64,000 nucleotides of DNA from Schmidtea nova (GCA_044892505.1 CM097883.1:64108001-64172000), one strand, 5' to 3'; positions 7,152 through 39,188 are shown, counted from the stretch's first letter. Program-made: numbers and translations. The notes: generated by a model from the letters alone, not told the origin.

Positions 7152-7290
7152 NNNNNNNNNNNNNNNNNNNNNNNNNNNNNNNNNNNNNNNNNNNNNNNNN
7201 NNNNNNNNNNNNNNNNNNNNNNNNNNNNNNNNNNNNNNNNNNNNNNNNNNNNNNNNNNNNNNNNNNNNNNNNNNNNNNNNNNNNNNNNNN
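7152..7290. other. Assembly gap (N run)
   Basis: Run of N. Confidence 1.
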
Positions 7291-8149: not shown

Positions 8150-9280
8150 CTTATTTTGTTATTGTTTTTGATTATTGTAGCCACATTTTTGTTAATTTCG
8201 AGTAGTTTGAGTGGATCTTTGTATTTGACTTCGAAAAATTTTGCATATGATTTTTTTTAAGTAAGTAGTCGGTTGTTAATGTTATTTTGCCATCGTTCTC
8301 TGAATTTGGTCTAGTTTTCAATATTTCTGTGAGATAATAAGATAATTCAAATATTTATTCATTCAATAAATCTACTTATTTAAACAACTTTATTTTCTTT
8401 TATAAATCATTTTTTTAAATTATTCTTCTTTATACAATTTCTTTTGGTTTGTTTTCTATGTTTTCAATGTATTTTGTTAAAATTTTTTTTTTATTTGTTA
8501 CTACGTTATTTCTTATGTTTGTTTTGAGTGAATGTAGGTTTGAATCTCTGACGAAAACTTTGTATATGGGACTTTCATTGTCGATTAAATTCGGTGTTTT
8601 TCTTATACCCAGTAAGATTGTCAGAAGTTGAGTAAATTAATTTCTGTCGTATGCTTTTGTTTTGATAGTTTCTTAAAGTGTTTTGTGCAGTTTCTCGATT
8701 TTTCCTTTGCTTGTGGGTCGTAAGCAGTTGTTTTATATTGTATTTTATACAGAGTACTGAATAGTTCTGATTCTGAGTGTTTCCATTGGTCCTTTATCAG
8801 TATTTTTGGTTGACCGTAGTGAGCTATCCAATTGGACTCAATGTTGCTACAAATGTTTTGTGCAGATATTTCTTTTAGCGGGATTATTTCAAACCAGTTT
8901 GTTTTCTTATTTATTATTGTTAGTAGAAATTTTAATTTTCTTTGGAGATAATGGTCCTACTATGTCTATGTGTATTGTTTCGATAGATTGATTACTCGGG
9001 AAGTTTACTTTTTGGGGGTATTAATTGGTTAGATTTAATTTGTTCTTTTTCAAATAATTCGCTGAATTCGAGTGCATTTATGTCATTTTCTATTCTTGAT
9101 ACATTATCTGCTGCTATATTTGCGGCTCCAGCGATATAATTGATAGTAAAATTAAATTTTGATATATAATTTAATTGTCTAATTTGTCTTGGTAATGGGT
9201 TTTTCAGTTGTATTGTGTTTGTTAGTGGCTTGTTGTCTGTATAGATTTTGAAGTTTCTTGCTTCCAGTAAATGTTGGAAG
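8150..9280 (-). pseudogene. Degenerate Ty3/Gypsy pol remnant (RNase H C-terminus and integrase); target of the giant element
   Basis: QHLLEARNFKIYTDNKPL...YIAGAANIAADNVSR (RNase H); IHIDIVGPL and GKIEKLHKTL (integrase) with many stops. Confidence 0.85.
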
Positions 9281-9668
9281 TGCTGGTGTGTTGGTTGGAT
9301 TGACAACTGAGATCCTTAGGATTTTATATGTTAGGGTGATCTCGCCAACATAAAAACATTCCCCCGCTGACACCCATGATGTATCCCTAACTACTCATCA
9401 TGTTGGTGCTGTGTCAACGTTGTGAAATGACAAGGCAGGTGAGCAACCTTTCGGCTACTATTCCCTTGTTTATTCACGGGTCCACCACTACCGATAGAAG
9501 GTGTTTGTGGTTTTCTTTCGGTCCCACTTATGCTCTTTTCTTTTGTCCTAGGGTTGATTCGATGTTATCATATCTGCAGACTTAAAATGAACCAGGTTTT
9601 TGTTACTTTTAATTCTCATACATGCGTCAAACAAACAAGACAAATCAAAATCATTCATTTATATACAT

Positions 9669-10250
9669 TTATTTATAGTTCAACAGTACAGAGGGTCTAA
9701 TCACATTTAGTAATTCTTGCTCAGAGAGACCACTAAGCAAGTCTACCTCTATCCCTACGCGATCGGCATACGCACGTCTTTCCCTGCGCCTTTTCGCTCC
9801 CAAGCGATTCCTTCTCTTCGTTCGTTTTGAACCTGCTGGCATTGTAGCTGTCACTGCATTAACTGTAGCTTCGGTCGATGTGTTCTCCGTTTGGGTGCTC
9901 GTAGTCACCGCTATCGTGCTTATCCATCGATTAAAGGTGCTTGCTCTGATCACGGGGCGTAATTGCTCAGCGATGAAATCCTGGGTCGACACCTTCAAAT
10001 AATTGGTCAACTCCAATTTCAGGGCTGCGATTTCTCGTGCTTGTTCATCGATCGTTCGTTCCGCTCTGTATCGGGCTTGTAAGATGGCTTTAACCCTCTC
10101 AGGATTAAACCATGTTGTCTTAATTCGCTGGTGCTCCTCATTCAGTTGTCTCAAGCGACTCTCGAGGACACGAGATCGTGCTCTATGTTCGCGTGCCTCT
10201 TGCTTGTATTTTCGATTGGGATTTTCGTCCATATCTGAGTAATGTATCAT
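9669..10250 (-). CDS. LTR-encoded ORF B (193 aa): coiled coil plus basic NLS-like tract
   Basis: Long ORF with coiled-coil heptads and KRTKRRNRLGAKRRRERR. Acceptor-like TTACTCAG before MDEN; AATAAA at the stop. Confidence 0.6.
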   Translation of the reverse strand: MIHYSDMDENPNRKYKQEAREHRARSRVLESRLRQLNEEHQRIKTTWFNPERVKAILQARYRAERTIDEQAREIAALKLELTNYLKVSTQDFIAEQLRPVIRASTFNRWISTIAVTTSTQTENTSTEATVNAVTATMPAGSKRTKRRNRLGAKRRRERRAYADRVGIEVDLLSGLSEQELLNVIRPSVLLNYK

Positions 10251-10427
10251 TAACTAGGGTATATATGCATTGTTTGGTTTCTCAGTCATCATTTTATGGT
10301 TAAACAACTGCATTCCTATCCTTACTCATTCCTCATGCATCCCAAATCAAAACAAAAACCCTTTTAAATGGATACATATATTTGCAATTTACAACAGATA
10401 TTCGTTTATTGGGTGTTGTCCTCGTGA

Positions 10428-11063
10428 TCAATTGTATGGTCGTAACTCTTGGTTGGCCGGGTTCTCGTCTCGGCGAATCCCTGTTTCATGGTAGAGTTCC
10501 GGGGCTGGATTCCAACTCAGTTGGTTTTGATAAATGAACACCTCCCAGAGGCGAAGGTCTTTGGGCTCGGGGTGTTGATCCACGGAAACACTGCCTGGGG
10601 CGTTCGGGTAAACGAAGACTTCCCCAGTGTCACCACACCGAGGCCTGTCTAGCAGCAAATACCCGAGTTGGCCGAATGCCTGCCCGGTCATCATTCCGGT
10701 GCTTAGTACCCAACGGGGTTGTTGTGTTTCATCTACAAATTGATAGAACCATCTTTCGTATCCATCTTTGGTGGGGTTCGGGGAGGGCGTCCAATTTACA
10801 TCACCTTCCCACCTCAGCTGTAGTTGGAATGCACAGGCGGGAAAACTTGCCGCGGTGCTCATATGGGTCCTTGTCCATCGACGCAGGTGTCTGCGAGCGG
10901 AGTTGAAAATTTGGCGTGGGGCCTCCTTCTCTCCTTGAATTTCGGTAGGTAACTTTGGCGTGATGACGGAGCGGATGCGCCGTTTCCTCCGTAGAATGTA
11001 CTCCTCTAATTTGACGGTTAGGGGTCCTACCGGCTCCTTTATGAGATATTCTGTTTTCGTCAT
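10428..11063 (-). CDS. LTR-encoded ORF A (211 aa), unknown globular protein
   Basis: GC-rich ORF preceded by TTCCATTTCAG|AGCGAC-ATG and followed by AATAAA. Confidence 0.6.
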   Translation of the reverse strand: MTKTEYLIKEPVGPLTVKLEEYILRRKRRIRSVITPKLPTEIQGEKEAPRQIFNSARRHLRRWTRTHMSTAASFPACAFQLQLRWEGDVNWTPSPNPTKDGYERWFYQFVDETQQPRWVLSTGMMTGQAFGQLGYLLLDRPRCGDTGEVFVYPNAPGSVSVDQHPEPKDLRLWEVFIYQNQLSWNPAPELYHETGIRRDENPANQELRPYN

Positions 11064-12522
11064 GTCGCTCTGAAATGGAATTTTAGGTTAACTGACAGAC
11101 TCTATCATCGACCATCGATATTTATGTCGATCAACCTACTTGGTTTATCGTTCTATTAGCCGTAGGCCTTAGTGGTTCGCATATAATTTACTAGACCATT
11201 GATCGCGGTGTTCATGTAGGTGGTGATTTTACTTGGGTGAGTTGATTCACTCCGCAATTGCAGTTGGTTTTAGCCACGCTCATTTAGGCTTGTTATTTAC
11301 AATCATACTTTACGTTACATTAAATTTCTCATCAATCATTTTCATGCATTTAACATGGTTCATTTACAGATCATCATCAGCAACTATCAAGGTTCACGTC
11401 ACGGGGAAAATTTAGTAATCCCTTTGTCAACTACTTTGTGGAGAAATGCACTAATTTTATCTACTGTCGGGTCTGACTTTTCATGCCCTTCGTGGGTTAT
11501 AGGTATATGTCTGACAGCTCATTCGGTTCGCTACTGCCCTTAGTGCTAATGTCTTTTTGACCGCGATGTTACGCTTTACCTATCTCGATTCTCATCGACT
11601 TCTGATGTACCAGCACTCCTTGAAGGTACACTCCTTCGTCCAGATACCTCATGCATGTATCTCCCCTTGCGAAATAAGCTTTACCTTGATTTGATTTATG
11701 ACCATTAGCTGTCACTCGATACCCTATCATCATGATATAAAGTGTTGATACTAGGCCGTCTCATCCTTGATTTGGTTCATGATCATTATGGCTTATTCGA
11801 TACCCTATGTGCATTTACCCCTTCCGCTTTCCAAATATTTAGTACACTTATAGTCCCGCCGCATCAGCACCTCACAACCGAAAGATTGTGTTGCGCTGAG
11901 AGGCCCCGAGAATCCGTCAGGCTGTTAGGCCTCCGGAAAACCTTATTGATTTTATTATGGTTAACAATTAAAATTATGAGGGTTAGACACATCAATAACA
12001 TAACACCAAATTACCTTTTATTTCCTTTCCAAATTCGTTTCACAATGATCTCAGTAGTCACAAACAGTTCACACTTGGTAAAGATAACATTGTCAAATAC
12101 TGATTTTACTTCAGTATTTATACTGAACCGGTGTTGTTGGTTAGCCAATCAGCATCGAGTATGTGTGTATGTTTGCTTCATTTTTTATGTTGTCGGCTTT
12201 TTGCTGCCTAACTTAACTCGCCGATTTGTTTGGTTAATCATGCGGTAAGTTTATTTTTTGTACGATTTAATTTTTATTTGATTTTGCTTTAGGTCTTCGG
12301 TGACATCCGCCCACGCGCTGTCATATTCCAATTTTATCTGCTTCGCATGAGTGAGTTTTGAAGATTTTTGTTGTTTTGATTAATATGTTATTTCTTTTAG
12401 ATGTTGCCGCCTATTTTGTTACGCTTTGGTGTTGGTAATTTATTTTGTTGTTATTCTGTGTTTAATTTATTTTATTGATTGTACATTATTTTCAGATGCT
12501 GCTCGATTTGGCTGGCCCAACA

Positions 12523-12540
12523 TCACTCGGGGTCCCCTAA
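12523..12540 (-). promoter_or_regulatory. Atypical polypurine-tract position
   Basis: TTAGGGGACCCCGAGTGA abuts the 3-prime LTR. It is purine-rich but interrupted by CCCC. Confidence 0.45.
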
Positions 12541-12726
12541 AATTGCGTCCCGCAATTACATGCATATACTTACATCAACATACATAAAAAGTTCGTGACA
12601 GAATTCACATTCAAAACCACATAAGGTGGTAGCTGTTATACCCATTTTTACACAAAGTCACACATTGTCATTGTCATGTTTATATTGTTACACAGTTCAA
12701 TGTTTCTGGCTCATAGGGGTTGATTT

Positions 12727-13251
12727 TCAGGTCCTTTCACTGGTTGACTGCATTTCGTATCGGGCTTGGATTTGTCGTAGATGACTTCTCATTCTCTGTT
12801 GGGTTTTTGCTTCTCTTTTGGCGCATCTACACATTATCATTTGTTGTTGTTTGAGGCTTCTGATTCGGTACCGGGTATATGTGATAACGATGATCAGGAT
12901 GATTGTCATTATTGTCATTGTGACTATTCCGACGATGATCCATCTGTTTCGGATTTCGGATTCGATTTGGGTTTGACCTTTGATTGGCTTTAGGTGATCT
13001 TGAAAGGTTTTATGGATTTCTCGGATCTTCTCGATTTGATCGAATAGGGTTTGTAAGGGTTTGCGATGATCATGACTGATTCGCATTTGTCGGATTAATT
13101 GTTTCAAGTCTTCTTTGACTTCGTTTAATTGTTTTTCGATTTCTTGGGATATCTCGTTTGACAGGGTTCTTTGAATTTCGGTTGTCGAAAGGTTCATGAT
13201 TATTGCAGTTAACATAATCGTTCGGATTGATAGGATTTTGAGCCAGATCAT
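12727..13251 (-). CDS. Small type I membrane protein (174 aa)
   Basis: N-terminal hydrophobic signal-like segment, helical region, TM WIIVGIVTMTIMTIILIIVITY, basic tail. Confidence 0.7.
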   Translation of the reverse strand: MIWLKILSIRTIMLTAIIMNLSTTEIQRTLSNEISQEIEKQLNEVKEDLKQLIRQMRISHDHRKPLQTLFDQIEKIREIHKTFQDHLKPIKGQTQIESEIRNRWIIVGIVTMTIMTIILIIVITYTRYRIRSLKQQQMIMCRCAKREAKTQQRMRSHLRQIQARYEMQSTSERT

Positions 13252-13324
13252 TTCTGATTATTCTACTGATTAATACCTGTTACATCGATTTGTACATTTT
13301 TACACACGGATTTTTCGCCTCTTT

Positions 13325-14485
13325 TTACACATCCGTCTCCTCTGGTTCATGGAACCCTTCATCTTGGAGTTCCATTGGTGGTGGTGGTATAAACGGTAAC
13401 CACACCACTCTGCTTCTCCACATTGCGATTTCGTTTTGATACGTTCTCGAGGTTTGTATTTCCTCGTCTAACAGATACTCCATATAGTCTGATTGTTCGC
13501 TCAGAGTTTCGATTTGTCTTTCCATTTCTTCCACTTTTTTCTTCAGGGCTTCTGTTTCTGTTGGTTCGGTTTCTACTTCTATGGTTTCTTTCTCTGCTTT
13601 CAGGGTTATTATCTGCTGTTTCAGTTCTTCGTTTTCTTTCGTAAAATTCGTTATATTTTCCTCATACGCTTGGTTTGATTCCGCATGTCTTTCCTTCACA
13701 GCTTTCAATTCCATTTTCTTTTGGGTCACCACCCCTTGATAACCATTTACATCTCTTTCCAAGCTTTCTTTTTCCCTGATCAACTTTTGTCTTTCCGCTT
13801 CCTCTTTTTGTCTAATGCCTCGCATTTCTCCATTTATCATCTGTATTTGCCATTGCGTTTTCTTTAGTTCCTTTGCCTGTTCTCGAATAAATCGCTGTCG
13901 TTTTCGACTCCATTCTTTGTTTGCTTGTTCTTGTCGCTTTCTCTGTTCCAATTCCTCTTTCAATTCGTCTATCTCTTGATACAATTTCCAATCTTCGCTG
14001 TGTGCTGTCCTTCTGATTATCTCTTTGGCTTCTTTATACACTCGTTTCGACTCCATCTTCCAATGTCTCGCTTGAGCCTTAATTGCTAGTATTTTTACCT
14101 CCATCTTTTCCTCTTGTTTCTCCCTCTCTTCTCTTCGCATTTTCATCATGTTTTTGTAATGTTCTGCTTGTTTTCTCATCAGCTGATAGGTCTCTTCTAT
14201 CTTCTGTCGACTTCGTACATTCGTTCCTTTTAGCTTCTCTATTTGTGTTGTCAGTTGTACTATCTCTTTATTCACTTCCTCGAGTTCTAGTTGATATAAC
14301 TCCATTCGTCTCTCGCATTTTAGTTTCTCGTAGTAATTATTTGTCATTACTTCGTTTAATTCTCTGGTTCTTTGTTCTACTTCCATTTTACATCTCCTTT
14401 CGATTTCTCTTTCTATTGTTTCTTGTTCGTTCAACATCTCGCTTCTCGTTTCATCTTCGATTACATGTTCATTTGCGTTTTCCAT
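13325..14485 (-). CDS. Long coiled-coil protein (386 aa) ending FIPPPP...ETDV
   Basis: E/K/R/Q-rich heptads; preceded by TTACAG|A-ATG. Confidence 0.8.
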   Translation of the reverse strand: MENANEHVIEDETRSEMLNEQETIEREIERRCKMEVEQRTRELNEVMTNNYYEKLKCERRMELYQLELEEVNKEIVQLTTQIEKLKGTNVRSRQKIEETYQLMRKQAEHYKNMMKMRREEREKQEEKMEVKILAIKAQARHWKMESKRVYKEAKEIIRRTAHSEDWKLYQEIDELKEELEQRKRQEQANKEWSRKRQRFIREQAKELKKTQWQIQMINGEMRGIRQKEEAERQKLIREKESLERDVNGYQGVVTQKKMELKAVKERHAESNQAYEENITNFTKENEELKQQIITLKAEKETIEVETEPTETEALKKKVEEMERQIETLSEQSDYMEYLLDEEIQTSRTYQNEIAMWRSRVVWLPFIPPPPMELQDEGFHEPEETDV

Positions 14486-14574
14486 TCTGTAATTTACAAA
14501 TTTACACTTGTTATACTATACGTTTATTGTTGTTGTCGATTTTTACACTTTATTTACGGGGTCGTTCATTCCGA

Positions 14575-15987
14575 CTACTCTAACCATCCTTTCGTTGACT
14601 TCGTGTTCATCACTGTTGTACTTGCTTTCTTTTCGATCTCCAACTCTACATATAAGTTGTCGTCGTACAACATCTCCCACATTGTTTGGTGTGGTATGAA
14701 TTTTGGTTCTCCAGTCGCTAATGAACATTCTGTGGTTGGTCTTTTGTAAGCCTCGTGCTTACCATCAATTTTGAATACTCTCGCTATTGTTTCTTTCGAG
14801 TTTCTCACTCTCATTATAGCCTTTGTTTCTAGTGGCCATTCTAATATGTCGTCGTAACCACCTTTACACAACGCAAAGAATAATGACACATGCGTTTCCT
14901 TTCCTGATCCATCTCCATTTGGATAAATTCTCATCCGGACTTTGTATCCGTTTTTCCACAGATAGAATGGTGGACTTGTTACCGACACTTGACTTCCTGC
15001 TTTTGCTGCTGCGAACTTTTCGTTGAAGTTCTTGATTTTCCATACATATGGTGCAACAGGTAAACTCTCGATATCCTCTGCATCTCGCACCCACATTTGA
15101 TGTCGCACGTTTACTTCTTTTACCAATGTCTCTATGACTTTGATTTTCTCCATCATTTTCTCTCTGGTGAGCTCGAATTGCTCTCTTGTTTCTAGTAATA
15201 ACTCCGTCATTATCCTCTGAGATTCGATTTCTTTTCCCAGCTTCTGTATGGTTTGTTCCATTCCGTTCAAATTTTCTGTTAACATCTCGGCGTGTTGTAC
15301 CGTTTCCGTTTCCAAATGCTCTTTCATCTCTTTGCTCGTTTTCTTTACTGCACATCCTTGTTTACTCCATATGCACTTTCTTGGTCTTGATTCGCATTGT
15401 TCCCAATGTTCTCTCAACATCACTTTTTCTCCGGTTCCACAATTACTTGGACAAATTCCTCTGAATTTTCCGCACACTTTCTCTTCTGCTACGTTGAGAT
15501 GTTCTGTTTCGATTACTTCTCTCGTCTCTTTCTGTGCACAGTATTGACACTCTATTATCTCTGCTTTGCACTCGTCCTTGTGATTTTTCGACTGCTTGAT
15601 GGTTATTGTCTGTTGACACTTTTCACATATCGCTTTCTTGTTTTCGCATTTCCCCAGATGTTGTCTTAACTCGATTATTTGTCCCTTCCATTCACAGGGT
15701 TGGTTTATACATTCTGTTTTTATTTTCCAGATCTCCTTTTGTATTGCTTTGTCTGGTTTCGTCTCGTTGATTAGTAGTTTATCGTCACACTCTGGACACT
15801 TTCTTGTCTCACTTTCCCTGATTATTTGCAATATACACTTGATGCACATCCTGCATCCACATTCCGTTTGTCTCGGTTTTAGCAGTAGATTTTTACACTT
15901 TACACACGTCACATTTACTCCCCATTGTCGATTTTCTCTTCTTAGAATCTCGATGGTTTGGTAATCTGCTTCACTTTCTGCTCTCAT
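14575..15987 (-). CDS. TRAF: TNF receptor-associated factor (TRAF2/3/5-like), intronless
   Basis: RING (CVKC..PRQTECGCRMCIKC..CPEC), TRAF zinc fingers, coiled coil and MATH domain (YVWKIKNF..SPPFY..GYKVRMRIYPNGDG..HVSLFF..DDILEWP). Confidence 0.95.
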   Translation of the reverse strand: MRAESEADYQTIEILRRENRQWGVNVTCVKCKNLLLKPRQTECGCRMCIKCILQIIRESETRKCPECDDKLLINETKPDKAIQKEIWKIKTECINQPCEWKGQIIELRQHLGKCENKKAICEKCQQTITIKQSKNHKDECKAEIIECQYCAQKETREVIETEHLNVAEEKVCGKFRGICPSNCGTGEKVMLREHWEQCESRPRKCIWSKQGCAVKKTSKEMKEHLETETVQHAEMLTENLNGMEQTIQKLGKEIESQRIMTELLLETREQFELTREKMMEKIKVIETLVKEVNVRHQMWVRDAEDIESLPVAPYVWKIKNFNEKFAAAKAGSQVSVTSPPFYLWKNGYKVRMRIYPNGDGSGKETHVSLFFALCKGGYDDILEWPLETKAIMRVRNSKETIARVFKIDGKHEAYKRPTTECSLATGEPKFIPHQTMWEMLYDDNLYVELEIEKKASTTVMNTKSTKGWLE

Positions 15988-16077
15988 TCTACAACAATAT
16001 TTACATCAATTTCCCCGTATTTTTGATTTTTTCTGGTTCTTTATTTACACGTATTTACACAGTTTTCCGCTTATTCA

Positions 16078-16428
16078 CTATACATCCTCAGTTGAATCTG
16101 GCTCTGGATACACGTCTATCTCATTTACAATCCAGCTCGTCCAACTATCCGGTATCTCTTCTTCTTCATGTCTCGTTAATCGGTCAATTTCCTCTGCTTG
16201 CCAGTTGTTCACTTCATTCAATGTTCGGTTCTCGTTCTGTAATTCGTTTATCTGTAGTTGTTGGATCTCGATTTTGTTCATTGCTTCGAAATTACAGTTA
16301 TAACTCTCGGTTAATAATTGCGTTTTGGCCGTCAACTGGCTCTGTAATTCATTTACTGTTCTGGCTAGCAGGTCGCATTGTACTTTCCATCTCGCCATCA
16401 TCGACATCTCGATATTTTCTTGGTTCAT
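16078..16428 (-). CDS. Short coiled-coil protein (116 aa) ending EPDSTEDV
   Basis: Heptad pattern; preceded by TCTAG|AAAAACG-ATG; AATAAA downstream. Confidence 0.65.
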   Translation of the reverse strand: MNQENIEMSMMARWKVQCDLLARTVNELQSQLTAKTQLLTESYNCNFEAMNKIEIQQLQINELQNENRTLNEVNNWQAEEIDRLTRHEEEEIPDSWTSWIVNEIDVYPEPDSTEDV

Positions 16429-16551
16429 CGTTTTTCTAGATTATATACATCATTCTCTTTTTTCTGTTTTTATGTTTTATAATATTTATACCCATACGTA
16501 TACGGTTATGCATTGGTTTTTACAATATTATTTACACTCATATTCCACCCT

Positions 16552-19755: not shown

Positions 19756-19764
19756 CAGCTCTTT

Positions 19765-31443: not shown

Positions 31444-32320
31444 CCCGATTCCACTATCTTGGAATACTGTACTAGTTTTCTTTACTTCTAGTTCACCACT
31501 TGTTTCTGAATTCGACTCTTCTTCTTCGCTACTCTCTGTTTCGTTATCTCTTGATTCGCTTCTTGCTCTGTTTTCCCTGACTAGTTCACTGTCTATCGTC
31601 TCTACTTCGTTTTGTACTTCTAGATCTTCTGGGGTTTCTTCTTGATTCTCTTTATTACTCGAATTATCGCTGATCTCTACTTGTTTGTTCTTTTGTTGCT
31701 TAGGCTTGTTACCTGTTCTTGTCCTTTTTGCTGCTTTTCTTTCTGCTTCCGTTAAGATTGGTATTATACCTGATCTTGTTTCTCGTCCCTCAATTTTGTC
31801 TATTCCTCAACTTCCTATATTCTCAATTGATTTTCTACTCCGCTTTTGCTTTGCTTCTTCTTTGCTTTGTTTCCTTTGATTGCTCTGACTGCTAGATTGC
31901 TTTGGATTGCTTGATTGATTTGTTTCCTTAAAACAAATAATCACTTACACGATACGTCCCCGTTATCGTGTTTCTCGTCCCTCTCACGGGTGTAGTCATA
32001 ATTCATGAAGATCCCCATTTTTCCCATTTCCCTTGATTTTAAGTCTATTTAAATTATCTATGCAGTCGTATCAATTATCTATTCTTTATCAAATACACCA
32101 ATTACTTTTCCCCAGTTTCCCAATTACTTTGTCGCTCAGCGCTCTTATTATTCCCTTTACTTTTCTCAGGCTTCTCTGGCTCTGAGTTCAAATCTCCCCT
32201 TATCTGTCAACTACTCTATTTCCCAACTATTCGCTTTATCTCCTATTCGCACTACGTTTACAACTTCATTTCAATTCTCATCTCTACTCACCTTTAATTC
32301 AACTGACGTCTCTCGTTGGC

Positions 32321-32784
32321 CTGCTGGGCTTTCCAGTCAGCGCCTTTAATCTCACTTTTTATCTCGATCTTTGTTTTCTCTCAACTTCACTCATTATCTC
32401 ATTAGCCTGCTGGGTTTTCCAGTCAGCGCTTTTAATCTCACCTTTTATTTCTGCTTCATTATTCTCGACCTCTATTGTCGTTTCATTAGCCTGCTGGGTT
32501 TTTCCAGTCAGCGCTCTTATTATTCACCCTTTATCTCTTCACTGTCGACTTTTACCTGCTCTTTACTCCGATGATCATCACTTTTGACCTGCTGGGTCTT
32601 CCAGTCAGCGTCCCCAATTTCACCACTTTATTGTTACTCCCTTTTATTCTCTCGATCTTTCCTGATCGTTATCATTGACCTGCTGGGTTTTCCAGCTAGC
32701 GTCTTTACCACTTTTACCTGTCTTAACAAACCGGTTTCATTTTATTCCCATGGAATCTCATGGTCTGCTGGGTTTTCCAGTCAG
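32321..32784 (-). repeat. Array of six spaced ~20-nt bulged stem-loop motifs
   Basis: CTGACTGG-AAAAC-CCAGCAG copies (plus-strand starts 32321, 32407, 32491, 32589, 32680, 32765), 84-98 nt apart. Confidence 0.85.
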
Positions 32785-33112
32785 CACCCTTCACTTACTC
32801 ACTTTACTTTATTACTCCTATGTATGCATACTTTGACGTCGTTAGGCCACATAATCAGCTTTACTCGCATTTATCAATTCCCAGGTGCGCACCTTCAACT
32901 CTCACATTATTACCTCGGTTTCTTTCAACCCTTATTCCTCATTATTCGCTATTCATTTTCACTATTCATCATTTATCCTCATTATCATTTATTCATCTCC
33001 ATTATTGCTTGTTGATCTTCACTATCCGGATAGTTTTATACGTAATTTAGTCCTCATCTGCCTCACTTCGTCGTCTTTCTCGTGGGCTTTTACTCAATAT
33101 TTTATTTCGAAC

Positions 33113-33680
33113 GAGAACTATGCTCACTGCTGAGAACTATGCTCACTAACGAGAACTATGCTCAATGACGAGAACTATGCTCAATGACGAGAACTATGCT
33201 CAATGACGAGAACTATGCTCACTAACGAGAACTATGCTCACTGACGAGAACTATGCTCAATGACGAGAACTATGCTCACTAACGAGAACTATGCTCACTG
33301 ACGAGAACTATGCTCACTGACGAGAACTATGCTCACTGGCAAAACATGGTTGTTATGAGAGTTTTGCTTACTGATGGAAACTCTTTGCTCCGGGGATTAT
33401 GTTCCCCGATGAGAACTATGCTCACTGATGGTGACTACAGGAATTATGCTTCCTGATGAGAACTACGCTCACTACGATGACTATGTTTGTTGATGAGAAC
33501 TACGCTCACTGATGAGGACTATGTTTGCTGTTCTTGTGTTTATTACTGAGAACTCTGCTCACTACGAGAACTATGCTCACTATGATGTTGTGTTTTTATG
33601 ACGAGACCTATGCTCACTAGGATGTTATTTTTATGACGAGACCTATGCTCACTATGAGACCTATGCTCACGAACGAAAAC
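33113..33680. repeat. 19-nt tandem repeat (GAGAACTATGCTCACTGAC)
   Basis: 12 near-perfect units at 33113-33340, then degenerate units to ~33680. Confidence 0.95.
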
Positions 33681-34032
33681 TCGAAATATCATCTCTCAGT
33701 GGTTGCATGTGTTGCTTCGGGATGTTCCTCCCAGTGGTCACTTATGCTTCTTCGGAGAATCTATTGTTGCGTTTCGTTAAGTTCTATCTTTCAAGAACTA
33801 TGGGCAAATCCTTTCTCTCCAGGACCCCTTTTATCATTTCCTTTCTTTCAAGGATTTCCTTTAACCTCGAGTTTTCCATTTACTCGGTTCATCTGTTATA
33901 CCCCTTTATTCTATTATCGATTCGTCAACCTTTCTACTTGATTTTACCTTATGCGAGCTGATTACGTGCCTTTCATCATATACCACGTTTCGCTATTCAT
34001 CTTACTCATTTCATTGCTTTCTCTCTCTCTTT

Positions 34033-34061
34033 ACTGATCAGTTTATCCTCCTATTTTTATA
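34033..34061 (-). promoter_or_regulatory. Candidate internal TATA-Inr promoter
   Basis: TATAAAAA at 34061 and TCAGT ~26 nt downstream; CCAAT boxes upstream. Confidence 0.4.
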
Positions 34062-34371
34062 GTTTTTCTCTGCGCGCGCCTACACCTCATTAAGTTGTCC
34101 CTACCTTTCACCCCAACTAAAATATATAAAAAGATCGCATTGGTCCACTGATGCACGATGTGGTGATCAGTCACATCACAAGAGCTTTCCAATATCCGCG
34201 ATTGGATCCCTTTCTACACATCTCGGGTGAGTTGATCAGTTGGTTCCCCCCAATGGGTGCTTATCGGACTACTCGTAAGTAGCTCATTATTACTTAGGTC
34301 ATTTTTACCAAATCATTGTTAAACCCTCATAATTTCAATAACAACTGCACTTGTTCCAAACTTTATTTCTA

Positions 34372-34809
34372 TTACAAGTACACTGTTATTTTCTCGGATA
34401 CGGGAAGGTTGCACATAGGACATCGTTCGTTTATTTTACAGTTATTACAGAATCGAAAATGCCCACACGGCAACAACATTATCTGTATTTTGTTTATTTC
34501 ACAGATGTAACACGTCAGATACTGTCTCGTATATTCGGTTGTCGTTCTTATCCACTCATCGTGTTTTGTTGCAATCTGTTGTTCTAGCCTGTGGCACTCG
34601 ATATTCATTTCAGGGTTGTTTAATCGCTCTCTATACCACTGATATCGTGTTGTTCTATCCACTGTTATCTTATTCTCACTTATGCTCATCATCATTTCCG
34701 CTCTTTCTGTGTTGTTTGTCGGTTCGTGATATTCTACCACCTCGAGTCGTCTTAGCTTCCTCATTATTGTCTCCACTGTTTCGTTGTTTGTTTCGAAAAA
34801 CGTTTGCAT
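34372..34809 (-). CDS. IAP/MDM2-type C-terminal RING protein (145 aa)
   Basis: CYIC..IMLLPCGHFRFCNNC..CPMC..EKITVYL at the extreme C-terminus; AATAAA right after the stop. Confidence 0.85.
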   Translation of the reverse strand: MQTFFETNNETVETIMRKLRRLEVVEYHEPTNNTERAEMMMSISENKITVDRTTRYQWYRERLNNPEMNIECHRLEQQIATKHDEWIRTTTEYTRQYLTCYICEINKIQIMLLPCGHFRFCNNCKINERCPMCNLPVSEKITVYL

Positions 34810-35367
34810 TTCTTTTATTTTGTTCTCTATCCCCTGAATGAATTCTCATTAATTTTGTTATCGGTTTTTATTTATCATTTATTATTCCTATTCTATGGTA
34901 GCCCTACTGTTCGCTTTCTGTTGTTCTGTTTTGCGTCACTGCGTGTATATCCCCCCGTGTTCTTGAATGTCGCCCCGACATGATCATTGCTAGTTGTCTA
35001 CATTCATATCGTTTTCATGCATACCTTTCAACATACTTTTATATTGCGTCATGCATACCTTTTGTCACTTTTCATACTGTTACTCCACATACTATTTATC
35101 ATGCTTCATTCATCCTCTTATCTTCATTCCATTATCATTCATACTTTCATTCTCATGCATACTTTTATCCCGTTCATCAATCTCATTGTTTTACACATAT
35201 ACTTTTATTTATTATTTTTCAACCCGATTCATTTTTGCTTCAGGACCCTCAAACCCTCTGTTATTCTTTACTTTACTTTTCCTCGCTAAATTCACTTCAT
35301 CCCGGTTCATGCGCTCTAACACTGTCCGCAGATATCGAATTCATTTTTTCCCACAAAAATCGATTTA

Positions 35368-35385
35368 ATCCCGGCTGAGCCCCCA
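35368..35385 (-). promoter_or_regulatory. Primer-binding site, tRNA-Pro type
   Basis: TGGGGGCTCAGCCGGGAT, close to the canonical tRNA-Pro PBS TGGGGGCTCGTCCGGGAT; 6 nt from the 5-prime LTR. Confidence 0.85.
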
Positions 35386-35779
35386 AATTTATGCTGGTGT
35401 GTTGGTTGGATTGACAACTGAGATCCTTAGGATTTTATATGTTAGGGTGATCTCGCCAACATAAAAACATTCCCCCGCTGACACCCATGATGTATCCCTA
35501 ACTACTCATCATGTTGGTGCTGTGTCAACGTTGTGAAATGACAAGGCAGGTGAGCAACCTTTCGGCTACTATTCCCTTGTTTATTCACGGGTCCACCACT
35601 ACCGATAGAAGGTGTTTGTGGTTTTCTTTCGGTCCCACTTATGCTCTTTTCTTTTGTCCTAGGGTTGATTCGATGTTATCATATCTGCAGACTTAAAATG
35701 AACCAGGTTTTTGTTACTTTTAATTCTCATACATGCGTCAAACAAACAAGACAAATCAAAATCATTCATTTATATACAT

Positions 35780-36361
35780 TTATTTATAGTTCAACAGTAC
35801 AGAGGGTCTAATCACATTTAGTAATTCTTGCTCAGAGAGACCACTAAGCAAGTCTACCTCTATCCCTACGCGATCGGCATACGCACGTCTTTCCCTGCGC
35901 CTTTTCGCTCCCAAGCGATTCCTTCTCTTCGTTCGTTTTGAACCTGCTGGCATTGTAGCTGTCACTGCATTAACTGTAGCTTCGGTCGATGTGTTCTCCG
36001 TTTGGGTGCTCGTAGTCACCGCTATCGTGCTTATCCATCGATTAAAGGTGCTTGCTCTGATCACGGGGCGTAATTGCTCAGCGATGAAATCCTGGGTCGA
36101 CACCTTCAAATAATTGGTCAACTCCAATTTCAGGGCTGCGATTTCTCGTGCTTGTTCATCGATCGTTCGTTCCGCTCTGTATCGGGCTTGTAAGATGGCT
36201 TTAACCCTCTCAGGATTAAACCATGTTGTCTTAATTCGCTGGTGCTCCTCATTCAGTTGTCTCAAGCGACTCTCGAGGACACGAGATCGTGCTCTATGTT
36301 CGCGTGCCTCTTGCTTGTATTTTCGATTGGGATTTTCGTCCATATCTGAGTAATGTATCAT
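35780..36361 (-). CDS. LTR-encoded ORF B, second copy
   Basis: Translation identical to 9669-10250. Confidence 0.6.
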   Translation of the reverse strand: MIHYSDMDENPNRKYKQEAREHRARSRVLESRLRQLNEEHQRIKTTWFNPERVKAILQARYRAERTIDEQAREIAALKLELTNYLKVSTQDFIAEQLRPVIRASTFNRWISTIAVTTSTQTENTSTEATVNAVTATMPAGSKRTKRRNRLGAKRRRERRAYADRVGIEVDLLSGLSEQELLNVIRPSVLLNYK

Positions 36362-36538
36362 TAACTAGGGTATATATGCATTGTTTGGTTTCTCAGTCAT
36401 CATTTTATGGTTAAACAACTGCATTCCTATCCTTACTCATTCCTCATGCATCCCAAATCAAAACAAAAACCCTTTTAAATGGATACATATATTTGCAATT
36501 TACAACAGATATTCGTTTATTGGGTGTTGTCCTCGTGA

Positions 36539-37174
36539 TCAATTGTATGGTCGTAACTCTTGGTTGGCCGGGTTCTCGTCTCGGCGAATCCCTGTTTCAT
36601 GGTAGAGTTCCGGGGCTGGATTCCAACTCAGTTGGTTTTGATAAATGAACACCTCCCAGAGGCGAAGGTCTTTGGGCTCGGGGTGTTGATCCACGGAAAC
36701 ACTGCCTGGGGCGTTCGGGTAAACGAAGACTTCCCCAGTGTCACCACACCGAGGCCTGTCTAGCAGCAAATACCCGAGTTGGCCGAATGCCTGCCCGGTC
36801 ATCATTCCGGTGCTTAGTACCCAACGGGGTTGTTGTGTTTCATCTACAAATTGATAGAACCATCTTTCGTATCCATCTTTGGTGGGGTTCGGGGAGGGCG
36901 TCCAATTTACATCACCTTCCCACCTCAGCTGTAGTTGGAATGCACAGGCGGGAAAACTTGCCGCGGTGCTCATATGGGTCCTTGTCCATCGACGCAGGTG
37001 TCTGCGAGCGGAGTTGAAAATTTGGCGTGGGGCCTCCTTCTCTCCTTGAATTTCGGTAGGTAACTTTGGCGTGATGACGGAGCGGATGCGCCGTTTCCTC
37101 CGTAGAATGTACTCCTCTAATTTGACGGTTAGGGGTCCTACCGGCTCCTTTATGAGATATTCTGTTTTCGTCAT
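36539..37174 (-). CDS. LTR-encoded ORF A, second copy
   Basis: Translation identical to 10428-11063. Confidence 0.6.
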   Translation of the reverse strand: MTKTEYLIKEPVGPLTVKLEEYILRRKRRIRSVITPKLPTEIQGEKEAPRQIFNSARRHLRRWTRTHMSTAASFPACAFQLQLRWEGDVNWTPSPNPTKDGYERWFYQFVDETQQPRWVLSTGMMTGQAFGQLGYLLLDRPRCGDTGEVFVYPNAPGSVSVDQHPEPKDLRLWEVFIYQNQLSWNPAPELYHETGIRRDENPANQELRPYN

Positions 37175-38633
37175 GTCGCTCTGAAATGGAATTTTAGGTT
37201 AACTGACAGACTCTATCATCGACCATCGATATTTATGTCGATCAACCTACTTGGTTTATCGTTCTATTAGCCGTAGGCCTTAGTGGTTCGCATATAATTT
37301 ACTAGACCATTGATCGCGGTGTTCATGTAGGTGGTGATTTTACTTGGGTGAGTTGATTCACTCCGCAATTGCAGTTGGTTTTAGCCACGCTCATTTAGGC
37401 TTGTTATTTACAATCATACTTTACGTTACATTAAATTTCTCATCAATCATTTTCATGCATTTAACATGGTTCATTTACAGATCATCATCAGCAACTATCA
37501 AGGTTCACGTCACGGGGAAAATTTAGTAATCCCTTTGTCAACTACTTTGTGGAGAAATGCACTAATTTTATCTACTGTCGGGTCTGACTTTTCATGCCCT
37601 TCGTGGGTTATAGGTATATGTCTGACAGCTCATTCGGTTCGCTACTGCCCTTAGTGCTAATGTCTTTTTGACCGCGATGTTACGCTTTACCTATCTCGAT
37701 TCTCATCGACTTCTGATGTACCAGCACTCCTTGAAGGTACACTCCTTCGTCCAGATACCTCATGCATGTATCTCCCCTTGCGAAATAAGCTTTACCTTGA
37801 TTTGATTTATGACCATTAGCTGTCACTCGATACCCTATCATCATGATATAAAGTGTTGATACTAGGCCGTCTCATCCTTGATTTGGTTCATGATCATTAT
37901 GGCTTATTCGATACCCTATGTGCATTTACCCCTTCCGCTTTCCAAATATTTAGTACACTTATAGTCCCGCCGCATCAGCACCTCACAACCGAAAGATTGT
38001 GTTGCGCTGAGAGGCCCCGAGAATCCGTCAGGCTGTTAGGCCTCCGGAAAACCTTATTGATTTTATTATGGTTAACAATTAAAATTATGAGGGTTAGACA
38101 CATCAATAACATAACACCAAATTACCTTTTATTTCCTTTCCAAATTCGTTTCACAATGATCTCAGTAGTCACAAACAGTTCACACTTGGTAAAGATAACA
38201 TTGTCAAATACTGATTTTACTTCAGTATTTATACTGAACCGGTGTTGTTGGTTAGCCAATCAGCATCGAGTATGTGTGTATGTTTGCTTCATTTTTTATG
38301 TTGTCGGCTTTTTGCTGCCTAACTTAACTCGCCGATTTGTTTGGTTAATCATGCGGTAAGTTTATTTTTTGTACGATTTAATTTTTATTTGATTTTGCTT
38401 TAGGTCTTCGGTGACATCCGCCCACGCGCTGTCATATTCCAATTTTATCTGCTTCGCATGAGTGAGTTTTGAAGATTTTTGTTGTTTTGATTAATATGTT
38501 ATTTCTTTTAGATGTTGCCGCCTATTTTGTTACGCTTTGGTGTTGGTAATTTATTTTGTTGTTATTCTGTGTTTAATTTATTTTATTGATTGTACATTAT
38601 TTTCAGATGCTGCTCGATTTGGCTGGCCCAACA

Positions 38634-38735
38634 GAAGTGTTTGACAGCTCATGAATTGCTAGTAGTTCTCGATCAAATGGTGAATACCTTGTTTGGTGTG
38701 CTTTTAATTTCTTTGAGAAAAACTCATAGATATGA
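38634..38735 (-). pseudogene. Upstream half of the interrupted Gypsy RNase H
   Basis: FSKKLKAHQTRYSPFDRELLAIHE..KHF continues into QHLLE at 9280 across the TSD. Confidence 0.85.
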
Positions 38736-38809: not shown

Positions 38810-39188
38810 TTAACTTGTTGGTAATGTTCTTAGTAACTATGGGAGGTTAAGGCCAGTTAATTCAATAATAGCATATAATTCCAGTAATCCAAGTTTGAGT
38901 AGGATATACTCATTGATTGATACAGTGAAATGCAAGGAAGCATATACCGATAAAGTGATGTTAGGAGAAGATGTCTCGTATCATGTATATCTGCAAACTG
39001 ATTTTTATAGAACTACCATCAGAGAATGTAGGTTGAAAAAGGCAAAGTTTGAATTTTTATGTGGGAGACACAGCTATTTGGTGTTATTAGGAGCAAAACT
39101 GGTACCAAGATCTATGGCAATACTACCAGACGATTGTGATATTACTTTATTTCATTTATGCAACAGAGTTCAAACTTGTGATGATTGA
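38810..39188 (+). pseudogene. Fragment of a paralogous chuvirus-like env N-terminus
   Basis: IYSL..T..CK....YHVY....T..EC....F.F.CGR..Y aligns by eye with the env N-terminus in the polyprotein. Confidence 0.75.

What the first reader, a model, noticed from the sequence alone, without database searches (positions are those of the whole stretch)
9277..38637. Giant young retroelement that looks like a complex enveloped virus carrying an apoptosis/immune-modulator cassette
One 29.35-kb Gypsy element combines an envelope glycoprotein with Bcl-2-like, TRAF, IAP-type RING, ankyrin (IkB-like), ubiquitin-like and FN3-receptor-like cargo. This parallels the host-modulation kits of large DNA viruses (vBcl-2, viral IAPs, vankyrins). 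Giant Gypsy Burro elements with extra domains are known from planarians; I cannot confirm whether this architecture has been described. Hypothesis: an infectious, cell-to-cell spreading element that keeps host cells alive.
Basis: partly seen in the sequence, partly recalled or inferred. Interest (0 to 1): 0.95.

Follow-up and report, generated by a model that had tools for sequence, protein, structure and literature searches.

The report
Intact giant Burro-type Gypsy retroelement
This is a real, complete and very recently inserted 29.4-kb Gypsy-type retroelement with a virus-derived envelope gene and TRAF, RING and ankyrin passenger genes, but this unusual architecture, and the idea that it is a provirus that meddles with host cell death and ubiquitin pathways, were already published for the planarian "Burro" elements.

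Summary
The element is real. Two 3,242-bp LTRs (9281-12522 and 35392-38633) are 100% identical, end in TG..CA and are flanked by a 4-bp target duplication (GAAG). All genes lie on the minus strand. One 3,892-aa ORF encodes gag (three CCHC knuckles), about 1,300 aa of cargo, a Monjiviricetes-type fusion glycoprotein (Pfam 2.8e-68) with its own signal-like and membrane segments, then protease, RT, RNase H, integrase and ankyrin repeats. Separate ORFs encode an IAP-type RING (no BIR), a full TRAF, an ankyrin/four-repeat membrane protein, coiled-coil proteins and a small membrane protein. The ubiquitin-like claim has partial support. The Bcl-2-like and FN3-like claims stayed inconclusive here.

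Arkhipova & Yushenova 2019 (PMC6431247) already describe this architecture for Burro/GYPSM1 elements. That includes env in frame between gag and pol, the TRAF, ubiquitin-like, BCL2-like and ankyrin motifs, and the provirus and host-tinkering hypotheses. So this is a known kind.

Minor new points:
- A 9-nt motif marks every junction of the 3' accessory genes.
- Two ORFs lie inside the LTR.
- ORF1 and the next ORF share a frame across one stop.

Infectivity and anti-apoptotic function remain untested. I did not fetch further copies.

The parts
9277..9280 (.). Target-site duplication (GAAG), left copy
9281..12522 (-). 3' LTR in element orientation: 3,242 bp, TG..CA, 100% identical to the other LTR. 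It carries the same two internal ORFs (10428-11063, 9669-10250).
12523..12545 (-). Short purine-containing stretch abutting the 3' LTR (weak polypurine-tract candidate)
   Evidence: inference
12727..13251 (-). 174-aa ORF: N-terminal hydrophobic segment, coiled-coil region, membrane segment (aa 105-123), basic tail. No significant Pfam hit.
13325..14485 (-). 386-aa ORF: glutamate/lysine-rich coiled-coil protein, no Pfam hit. It may correspond to the 'Smc' motif reported for GYPSM1.
   Evidence: PMC6431247
14575..15987 (-). 470-aa full-length TRAF: RING aa 28-67, TRAF zinc finger 170-224, coiled coil, MATH/TRAF-C 314-451
16078..16428 (-). 116-aa coiled-coil ORF, no significant family
12645..16537 (-). 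Span that holds all eight copies of the motif GTGTAAAWA. Seven lie in the five non-coding spacers of the accessory region, at least one per spacer, 0-75 nt after each stop.
16552..19755 (-). 1,067-aa ORF: ankyrin module (aa 104-197; 19165-19446), acidic linker, two internal hydrophobic segments, four ~90-aa repeats (17011-18423) with conserved T/CW/C/C, C-terminal membrane segment (aa 987-1005), short tail. It is in the same frame as ORF1, with 9 nt and one stop codon between them.
19765..31443 (-). ORF1, 3,892 aa, uninterrupted: gag, cargo, env, PR, RT, RNase H, IN, ankyrin
30544..31443 (-). gag part of ORF1 (aa 1-300): Retrotrans_gag aa 50-145 and three CCHC knuckles (aa 240, 259, 277)
28237..29751 (-). 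Cargo stretch of ORF1 (aa ~565-1069), conserved at 32% identity with the only database relative (P0016). It includes the module whose start matches ubiquitin (aa ~913-944).
26569..27186 (-). Candidate Bcl-2-like region of ORF1 (aa 1420-1625): predicted all-helical, membership not shown
24664..26571 (-). env part of ORF1 (aa ~1625-2260): internal signal-like hydrophobic segment, Monjiviricetes_fusion domain (aa 1643-2253 in two stretches, with an acidic insert that carries a dibasic R-x-K-R pattern), membrane anchor aa 2224-2242, 15 cysteines
23860..24132 (-). Aspartic protease (RVP, aa 2438-2528)
22720..23196 (-). Reverse transcriptase (RVT_1, aa 2750-2908)
22144..22533 (-). RNase H (aa 2971-3100)
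21250..21819 (-). Integrase (H2C2 zinc domain + rve core, aa 3209-3398)
20158..20469 (-). Ankyrin repeats at the C-terminus of ORF1 (aa 3659-3762). The surrounding ~240-aa module is paralogous to the N-terminus of the 1,067-aa ORF.
31444..35391 (-). 3.9-kb leader between the 5' LTR and gag. It is A-rich on the coding strand and non-coding except for the RING ORF. It holds tandem repeats (86-bp unit at 32311-32538; 19-bp unit x12 and related units at 33072-33657).
34372..34809 (-). 145-aa ORF with a C-terminal IAP-type RING (zf-C3HC4_3, aa 98-138); no BIR
35367..35385 (-). Primer-binding-site candidate: 19 nt starting TGG, 6 nt downstream of the 5' LTR. Its complement ends in CCA and has the layout of a tRNA 3' end.
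   Evidence: inference (no tRNA gene in the window to match)
35392..38633 (-). 5' LTR in element orientation. The TATA-like cluster at LTR offset ~2846-2864 and AATAAA at offset 3049 suggest a very long U3.
   Evidence: U3/R/U5 split is inference
36539..37174 (-). 211-aa ORF inside the LTR (also at 10428-11063), coding strand of the element, no Pfam family
35780..36361 (-). 193-aa ORF inside the LTR (also at 9669-10250): coiled-coil region plus an arginine-rich stretch, no Pfam family
38634..38637 (.). Target-site duplication (GAAG), right copy

Best explanation
The region is one complete, very recently integrated copy of a Burro-type giant Ty3/Gypsy LTR retroelement. This kind is described from dugesiid planarians. 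The host of this window is not known to me and is only inferred from the architecture and the AT-rich flanks. SHOWN: identical LTRs with a target duplication; a PBS-like site; one open 3,892-aa gag-cargo-env-PR-RT-RH-IN-ankyrin reading frame; and eight further open reading frames on the same A-rich strand (RING upstream of gag; ankyrin/repeat membrane protein, two coiled-coil proteins, a full TRAF and a small membrane protein downstream of pol; two ORFs inside the LTR). INFERRED mechanism, in four steps. (1) It copies itself like any LTR retroelement: transcription from the 5' LTR, tRNA-primed reverse transcription, then integration with a 4-bp duplication. (2) The giant polyprotein is threaded through the ER membrane. 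Gag and cargo stay cytosolic. The internal signal-like segment (aa ~1625-1645) sends the class III-type fusion glycoprotein into the lumen. The anchor at aa 2224-2242 returns PR-RT-IN to the cytosol. Host signal peptidase and the element's protease would then cut the pieces apart, as in polyprotein RNA viruses. (3) The tightly packed 3' accessory ORFs (73-123-nt spacers, each with the motif GTGTAAAWA) and the ORFs in the putative U3 are expressed from processed sub-genomic RNAs. (4) The TRAF, the IAP-type RING, the ubiquitin-like module(s), the ankyrin modules and the possible Bcl-2-like region act on host ubiquitin, TRAF/NF-kB-type and cell-death signalling in the expressing cell. The envelope gives at least the potential to leave the cell. 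Whether it does so is unknown.
For: Element boundaries and youth. Uniform composition, one strand and compact spacing. Pol and gag domains. Env domain with flanking signal-like and membrane segments. TRAF. IAP-type RING. Ankyrin and its duplication. The cargo is conserved as an open frame in a relative only 32-34% identical (P0016), which carries MATH in frame where this copy has none. Junction motif. Published description of the same architecture and hypothesis: PMC6431247. BURRO1 RNA is expressed in planarian tissues and rises on smedwi-2 knock-down: PMC8532177. GAG-ENV-POL order with gB-type env in Platyhelminthes: PMC13524379.
Against: I made no nucleotide or phylogenetic comparison with Burro-1 to -4/GYPSM1, and the host species is unknown. 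ORF1 is ~1,000 aa shorter than the published Burro ORF1s. BIR and dUTPase, reported for Burro, were not detected. Bcl-2-like and FN3-like folds were not demonstrated. The polypurine tract is weak. Polyprotein topology, sub-genomic expression and every host-modulating role are inference without expression or protein data. Identical LTRs could also come from assembly collapse or gene conversion.
Confidence: 0.8

Rival explanations
1. Same element, different role for the cargo. The RING, ubiquitin-like, TRAF and ankyrin parts would serve the element's own life cycle: ubiquitin-dependent trafficking and budding of Gag, particle assembly, nuclear import, or evasion of silencing. They would not keep the host cell alive or blunt immunity. 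The env may work only within or between neighbouring cells, or not at all.
For: The ubiquitin-like and unknown cargo modules sit inside the Gag-containing polyprotein rather than as free proteins. No BIR domain accompanies the RING, and a Bcl-2 fold could not be shown. The direct anti-apoptotic parts are therefore the weakest. TRAF and RING domains are generic E3/adaptor modules.
Against: A complete TRAF with a receptor-binding TRAF-C domain is hard to link to particle assembly. The literature reports BIR and BCL2-like motifs in sister Burro families (PMC6431247).
Confidence: 0.3
2. The element is an ordinary intracellular retrotransposon. Its env and accessory ORFs would be evolutionary baggage, open in this young copy only because too little time has passed to break them.
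For: Identical LTRs mean almost no time for decay. No second full copy was compared here.
Against: The cargo stretch is kept as an open frame in a relative at only 32-34% identity, which neutral decay would not allow. The env domain still matches its Pfam model at 2.8e-68 over profile positions 4-579 of 653. Long ORFs in 40-47% A sequence are very unlikely without selection (composition; my arithmetic).
Confidence: 0.12
3. Assembly chimera, or host genes trapped between two unrelated LTR copies.
For: Giant repeats are hard to assemble, and perfectly identical 3.2-kb repeats can be collapsed or copied by assemblers. An N run lies 2 kb to the left (7152-7290).
Against: A matching 4-bp duplication flanks the pair of LTRs. 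All ORFs share one strand, one A-rich composition and tight spacing. They are intronless and show no match to the flanks. The gene order matches a published family.
Confidence: 0.03

Closest known systems
Burro / GYPSM1 giant Gypsy-like LTR retrotransposons of Schmidtea mediterranea and the Burro-like element of Dugesia tigrina (Jurka 2007; Grohme et al. 2018; Arkhipova & Yushenova 2019, PMC6431247)
   Same: Total length ~30 kb with an internal region above 20 kb. Tandem repeats in the element. A giant ORF1 that starts with gag and three CCHC knuckles. Env in frame between gag and pol, matching mononegavirus-type fusion glycoproteins. PR-RT-RH-IN followed by ankyrin repeats. TRAF/MATH, RING, coiled-coil ('Smc') and ubiquitin-like motifs. 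Accessory ORFs that in other members are sub-domains of the polyprotein. Here P0016 has MATH in frame, whereas this copy has a separate TRAF gene.
   Different: ORF1 is 3,892 aa here against 4,873 and 5,140 aa. With the next in-frame ORF it would be ~4,960 aa. TRAF is a complete stand-alone gene 3' of pol. BIR and dUTPase were not detected, and BCL2-like was not demonstrable. Nucleotide or phylogenetic identity with Burro-1 to -4 was not tested.
GAG-ENV-POL Ty3/gypsy 'errantiviruses' with herpesvirus gB-type (class III) env in Platyhelminthes, Nematoda and Bryozoa (PMC13524379)
   Same: Env lies between gag and pol. The env is of the class III/Chuviridae-like kind, and the host phylum probably matches.
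   Different: Those elements are of ordinary size with separate ORFs. Here env is fused in frame into one polyprotein and is preceded by ~1,300 aa of cargo.
Mosquito BEL/Pao elements that captured a Chuviridae-like glycoprotein (Dezordi et al. 2020, PMC7642597)
   Same: An LTR retroelement that acquired a Monjiviricetes-type fusion glycoprotein as env.
   Different: A different retroelement superfamily, env as a separate 3' ORF, and no signalling cargo.
Complex retroviruses and large foamy-like fish endogenous retroviruses with accessory ORFs (cited in PMC6431247)
   Same: Several accessory ORFs 3' of pol and possibly in U3, which implies processed sub-genomic RNAs.
   Different: Those are Retroviridae, not Metaviridae, and reach up to ~17 kb. 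Their accessory genes are not TRAF, RING or ankyrin homologues.
Host-modulation gene sets of large DNA viruses (viral Bcl-2, viral IAPs, vankyrins); my own knowledge, analogy only
   Same: Captured cellular-type RING, TRAF and ankyrin modules carried by a mobile or viral genome.
   Different: No homology of the vehicles. Here no BIR was found, no proven Bcl-2 fold, and no IkB-specific signal in the ankyrin modules.

Membership tests
Ty3/Gypsy (Metaviridae) LTR retrotransposon | Two direct LTRs with TG..CA ends and a short target-site duplication | tested here: met
   3,242-bp LTRs, 100% identical, 4-bp GAAG duplication
Ty3/Gypsy (Metaviridae) LTR retrotransposon | Domain order PR-RT-RNase H-IN, with gag carrying CCHC knuckles | tested here: met
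   RVP 2438-2528, RVT_1 2750-2908, RNase H 2971-3100, integrase 3209-3398; Retrotrans_gag plus three zf-CCHC
Ty3/Gypsy (Metaviridae) LTR retrotransposon | tRNA primer-binding site next to the 5' LTR and a polypurine tract next to the 3' LTR | tested here: inconclusive
   A 19-nt TGG-initiated site lies 6 nt after the LTR, and its complement ends in CCA. No tRNA was available to match. The purine tract is weak.
Burro giant Gypsy family (planarians) | Giant size: internal region above 20 kb, total ~30 kb | tested here: met
   Internal region 12523-35391 = 22,869 bp; total 29,353 bp
Burro giant Gypsy family (planarians) | Env in frame between gag and pol inside one giant ORF | tested here: met
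   PF24664 at aa 1643-2253 of the 3,892-aa ORF
Burro giant Gypsy family (planarians) | MATH/TRAF, RING, ankyrin and coiled-coil cargo | tested here: met
   TRAF is a separate ORF here, an arrangement the literature allows for (PMC6431247).
Burro giant Gypsy family (planarians) | Ubiquitin/SUMO-like and BCL2-like motifs upstream of env | tested here: inconclusive
   Ubiquitin: a 30-residue match to polyubiquitin only. BCL2: no Pfam or PDB hit and a low-confidence model.
Burro giant Gypsy family (planarians) | BIR domain and dUTPase between PR and RT (reported for Burro1/GYPSM1) | tested here: not met
   No Pfam hit even at E up to 1-10. These are features of some members and are not stated to define the family.
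Burro giant Gypsy family (planarians) | Sequence or phylogenetic grouping with Burro-1 to -4/GYPSM1; host in Dugesiidae | not tested
The only relative found is the unnamed P0016, 32-34% identical.
Infectious enveloped retrovirus-like agent | Enveloped particles and transfer between cells or animals | not testable with these tools
   Only the coding capacity is seen: env with signal-like and anchor segments
TRAF family | RING, TRAF zinc fingers, coiled coil and a C-terminal MATH/TRAF-C domain | tested here: met
   All four are present in the 470-aa ORF. Best PDB hits are TRAF5/3/1/2 TRAF-C (E 1e-25 to 4e-27) and TRAF6 RING-ZnF. Identity to animal TRAFs is 24-31%.
IAP family | At least one BIR domain | tested here: not met
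   The 145-aa ORF has only the C-terminal RING, so it is IAP-RING-like and not an IAP.
Bcl-2 family | Bcl-2 helical bundle recognisable by profile or fold | tested here: inconclusive
   No PF00452 hit at E up to 10. PDB phmmer found nothing. The model has pLDDT 47, and BAX and Bcl-xL appear at E~0.8 among unrelated helical bundles.
FN3 / cytokine-receptor-like ectodomain | Seven-strand beta sandwich recognisable by profile or fold | tested here: inconclusive
   Four repeats with a conserved pattern. The model is all-beta with pLDDT 57. The top fold hits are tenascin/fibronectin FN3, EpoR, IL-21R and CD45 domains, but with E 0.1-1. No Pfam hit and no homologues.

The most novel reading that the evidence does not exclude
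This copy may represent a Burro lineage with a truly 'complex' gene-expression plan that has not been described. It would have an operon-like block of five accessory genes whose boundaries are marked by a dedicated 9-nt signal (GTGTAAAWA after every stop, and a YAG 1-7 nt before most start codons, which would suit cis- or spliced-leader trans-splicing in a flatworm). It would also have two further genes in the LTR's U3 and an optional read-through from ORF1 into an ankyrin/FN3-like membrane protein. That would make it the most gene-rich retroelement known that is still intact and active.
Probability: 0.15. Interest if true: 0.6.

Novelty: already known. Interest (0 to 1): 0.3.

Why it matters
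Burro-type elements stretch the known size and coding limits of retroelements. They show a retrotransposon that captured an RNA-virus fusion glycoprotein along with cellular signalling modules. That makes them a natural example of how a transposon could become a complex virus. This window adds an apparently intact, freshly inserted copy with every frame open. Such a copy is a good reference for descriptive work on transcripts, protein products and selection on the cargo. The concept itself was published in 2007-2019, so the finding does not open a new question.

Tried and rejected
- **Whole-ORF1 protein search:** it returned only generic pol polyproteins at 26-36% identity over 12-28% of the query, with no Burro-length relative.
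- **TRAF ORF search:** only cellular TRAFs at 24-31% identity, with no copy of the element.
- **C-terminal 650 aa of the 1,067-aa ORF:** no homologue.
- **Exhaustive representative search with cargo aa 480-1640:** one true relative (P0016) and one polyubiquitin.
- **PDB sequence searches:** nothing for the Bcl-2-like region and nothing meaningful for env.
- **Structure models:** the model of the Bcl-2-like region (single sequence) and the model of the repeat (four-row alignment) were both low-confidence, and no fold-search match reached E<0.1.
- **Self-BLAST:** it did not detect the internal repeats, which were found by cysteine spacing instead.
- **Spacer alignment:** no global similarity among the upstream spacers, only the short motif.
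- **RNA scans:** no Rfam family and no tRNA gene in the window.
- **Literature:** the Grohme et al. 2018 paper is not held in the library.
- **Rejected readings:** 'IkB-like' for the ankyrin modules, because only generic or designed ankyrin hits came back. 'IAP' for the RING ORF, because it has no BIR.
- **Join left out:** The pieces were searched apart.

Full report
**1. Is it there?**

Yes. A direct repeat with a start-to-start spacing of 26,111 bp extends to two 3,242-bp LTRs, at 9281-12522 and 35392-38633. They are identical at every base and begin TG and end CA. They are flanked by the same four bases, GAAG, at 9277-9280 and 38634-38637.

GC rises from 0.24-0.30 in the flanks to 0.38-0.45 inside. 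The plus strand is strongly T- and C-skewed, which means the minus strand is A-rich (A 0.40-0.47 in every ORF). All long ORFs lie on the minus strand. From the composition, about 6-7% of random codons would be stops. By my arithmetic, open frames of 3,892, 1,067, 470 and 386 codons are then far beyond chance. The only N run (7152-7290) is outside the element and was left alone.

**2. Anatomy, in element orientation (minus strand)**

- **5' LTR and leader.** The 5' LTR runs 38633 to 35392. Six bases later comes a 19-nt site that starts TGG and whose complement ends CCA, with the layout of a tRNA 3' end (35385-35367). This is a primer-binding-site candidate. A 3.9-kb leader follows. It is non-coding except for a 145-aa ORF (34372-34809) and holds tandem repeats with 86-bp and 19-bp units.
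- **ORF1 (31443 to 19765, 3,892 aa, no interruption).**
  - Retrotrans_gag at aa 50-145, with three CCHC knuckles at aa 240, 259 and 277.
  - About 1,300 aa with no Pfam family.
  - A hydrophobic signal-like segment at about aa 1625-1645 (read).
  - A Monjiviricetes_fusion glycoprotein domain (PF24664, E 2.8e-68). It matches profile positions 4-579 of 653 in two stretches, separated by an acidic insert with an R-x-K-R pattern. It has 15 cysteines and a strong membrane segment at aa 2224-2242.
  - Protease, RT, RNase H and integrase in Ty3/Gypsy order.
  - Ankyrin repeats at aa 3659-3762.
- **The 1,067-aa ORF.** It starts nine bases after the ORF1 stop and is in the same frame. Its first ~300 aa are a paralogue of the ankyrin module that ends ORF1 (19% identity over 241 aa, E 2e-8). 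The rest has two internal hydrophobic segments, four ~90-aa repeats that share T, CW, C and C, and a C-terminal membrane anchor.
- **Four more ORFs, with 73-123-nt spacers.** These are a 116-aa coiled coil, a 470-aa TRAF, a 386-aa coiled coil and a 174-aa small membrane protein.
- **LTR ORFs.** Each LTR holds two further ORFs on the element's coding strand, of 211 and 193 aa, with no family. They lie upstream of the only TATA-like cluster and of an AATAAA near the LTR end. They would therefore sit in a very long U3 and be part of the 3' end of the genomic RNA. This is inference.

**3.

- **TRAF: met.** It has RING aa 28-67, TRAF zinc finger aa 170-224, a coiled coil and MATH aa 314-451. The best solved-structure hits are TRAF5/3/1/2 TRAF-C domains (E 4e-27 to 5e-25) and TRAF6 RING-zinc finger. 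Identity to animal TRAFs is 24-31%.
- **IAP-type RING: met for the RING.** It matches zf-C3HC4_3, and the best hits are the cIAP2, XIAP, BIRC7 and cIAP1 RINGs at E 4e-6 to 3e-5. There is no BIR, so it is not an IAP.
- **Ankyrin: met, twice.** Only generic or designed ankyrins come back, and nothing is IkB-specific.
- **Ubiquitin-like: partial.** The start of one cargo module (ORF1 aa ~913-944) matches the first 30 residues of ubiquitin repeats in a polyubiquitin. That is 47-50% identity, at E 1e-5 against 1.8 billion representatives. There is no Pfam hit.
- **Bcl-2-like: inconclusive.** No Pfam hit appears even at E 10, and PDB phmmer finds nothing. The single-sequence model is all-helical but has pLDDT 47. 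BAX and Bcl-xL appear only at ranks 9-10 with E~0.8.
- **FN3-like: inconclusive but suggestive.** The repeat model is all-beta with pLDDT 57. The top fold matches are mostly FN3 and cytokine-receptor domains (tenascin, EpoR, IL-21R, CD45, fibronectin). All have E above 0.1, with TM about 0.3-0.5.
- **Not detected:** dUTPase and BIR, both reported for Burro1.

**4. Relatives**

The protein databases hold almost nothing like the cargo.

- The whole ORF1 finds only generic pol proteins.
- The 1,067-aa ORF finds nothing.
- An exhaustive search with cargo aa 480-1640 finds one real relative, P0016 (882 aa, a UniParc/MetaClust entry without organism).

P0016 is 32% identical over 538 aligned columns (ORF1 aa ~565-1069), and again over a following 83-column segment. 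It carries a MATH domain in frame between these two segments, where the present copy has none. That MATH is 32% identical to the MATH of the separate TRAF gene here. Two things follow.

- The cargo region has stayed an open, alignable protein across deep divergence, which argues for selection on it.
- The TRAF/MATH module sits in different places in different members, as the literature says.

In the flanks there is weak debris of older elements. An RNase H/integrase-like remnant abuts the left junction (8711-9276, minus strand). An env-like remnant lies just right of the element (38856-39188, plus strand; 28% identity to ORF1 env). I give only their outer bounds.

**5. What is already known**

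Arkhipova & Yushenova 2019 (PMC6431247, section 7) review Burro (Grohme et al. 2018) and GYPSM1 (Jurka 2007) of Schmidtea mediterranea, and a Burro-like element of Dugesia tigrina. They report:

- an internal region of up to 25 kb and a total above 30 kb, in thousands of copies;
- an ORF1 of 4,873 or 5,140 aa with gag and two or three CCHC knuckles;
- MATH_TRAF_C, a ubiquitin/SUMO-like motif, a BCL2-like motif and BIR;
- env, with hits to mononegavirus fusion glycoproteins, 'in-frame between gag and pol';
- dUTPase, PR-RT-RH-IN and ankyrin;

They propose that Burro elements are integrated proviruses and that the apoptosis and ubiquitination domains meddle with host systems. Other papers add context:

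- BURRO1 RNA is seen by FISH in planarian tissue and rises when SMEDWI-2 is depleted (PMC8532177).
- A 2026 survey reports the GAG-ENV-POL order with gB-type class III env in Platyhelminthes, and notes that the Chuviridae-like glycoprotein is structurally gB-like (PMC13524379).
- A Chuviridae-like glycoprotein was also captured by mosquito BEL/Pao elements (PMC7642597).

I could not read Grohme et al. 2018.

**6. How it most likely works**

Shown: it has every part of an autonomous LTR retroelement, all frames are open, and the insertion is very recent. Four steps are inferred.

- (a) It follows the ordinary LTR retrotransposition cycle.
- (b) The polyprotein takes a membrane-threaded topology. 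Gag and cargo are cytosolic. The env ectodomain is luminal, between the internal signal-like segment and the anchor. PR-RT-IN is cytosolic. Signal peptidase and the element's protease do the processing.
- (c) The 3' genes are expressed from processed RNAs.
- (d) The TRAF, RING, ubiquitin-like, ankyrin and possibly Bcl-2-like parts act on host ubiquitin, TRAF and cell-death signalling.

I put the identity (Burro-type giant Gypsy, intact and young) at about 0.8. The specific 'keeps host cells alive and spreads cell to cell' reading stands at no more than 0.2-0.3. The direct anti-apoptotic parts are the least supported, and a role of the cargo in the element's own assembly and trafficking fits the data equally well.

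**7. Points not found in the papers I could read**

- **Junction motif.** GTGTAAAWA occurs eight times in the element, always on the coding strand. Seven copies lie in the five spacers of the 3' accessory block (597 nt in total, at least one per spacer, 0-75 nt after each stop). The eighth lies within the first 100 nt of the TRAF ORF (15890-15898), also inside the 3' accessory block. None lies in ORF1, the 1,067-aa ORF, the leader or the LTR. The Markov-1 expectation for the spacers is 0.24.
- **Splice-acceptor-like sites.** Most accessory start codons are preceded within 1-7 nt by a YAG. This is compatible with splice acceptors, but it is weak evidence in A/G-rich sequence.
- **What the motif could be.** Candidates are a cistron-boundary or 3'-end signal, part of operon-like processing, or a UGUA-type RNA-binding-protein site. 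I cannot decide between them.
- **LTR ORFs.** The two ORFs inside the LTR, described in section 2.
- **ORF1 and the next ORF.** They share a frame, separated by one stop. Their sum of ~4,960 aa resembles the published ORF1 sizes. Only other copies can tell whether that stop is a family feature or a lesion of this copy.

**9. Verdict**

This is a real and striking element, correctly spotted. It is a member of an already described kind, and the proposed interpretation has been published. The residual interest lies in an apparently intact copy and in the junction motif and LTR ORFs.

Noticed in passing
window 722-3526: A ~2.8-kb structure with long inverted terminal arms (up to 194 nt at 98% complementarity). 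The arms contain ~36-bp tandem subrepeats in opposite orientation (814-1111 and 3147-3439). It looks like a foldback or non-autonomous DNA-transposon-like element.
   Followed up: partly
window 8711-9276 (minus strand): Weak remnant of an older retroelement's RNase H/integrase region directly abutting the left insertion junction (RT_RNaseH E 8e-4; tblastn E 0.03-0.3 to ORF1). The young element seems to have landed in old retroelement debris.
   Followed up: partly
window 38856-39188 (plus strand): Remnant of a Monjiviricetes_fusion-like env, 28% identical to ORF1 aa 1657-1757 (tblastn E 1.5e-8; Pfam E 0.004). It lies 220 bp right of the element and in the opposite orientation, and is probably an older Burro-like fragment.
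   Followed up: partly
window 12645-16537 (minus strand): The motif GTGTAAAWA follows the stop codon of each 3' accessory ORF. Seven copies lie in 597 nt of spacers against 0.24 expected, and there are none elsewhere in the element outside this block. Its function is unknown.
   Followed up: partly
window 35780-37174 and 9669-11063 (minus strand): Two ORFs (211 and 193 aa) lie inside each LTR on the element's coding strand, upstream of the TATA-like cluster and so probably in U3. The 193-aa one has a coiled-coil region and an arginine-rich stretch. Neither has a Pfam family.
   Followed up: partly
window 32311-33657: Several tandem-repeat arrays in the 3.9-kb leader between the RING ORF and gag: an 86-bp unit x2.7, a 19-bp unit x12, and related 28-37-bp units. 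Tandem repeats are also drawn in the published Burro maps.
   Followed up: no
window 7152-7290: A run of 139 N (assembly gap or mask) 2 kb left of the element. It was left as it is.
   Followed up: no
window 47079-47565 and 51882-54285: Two pairs of ~120-nt direct repeats at 73-74% identity in the right flank, and a local GC rise at 48-50 kb. ORFs there have no Pfam family.
   Followed up: no
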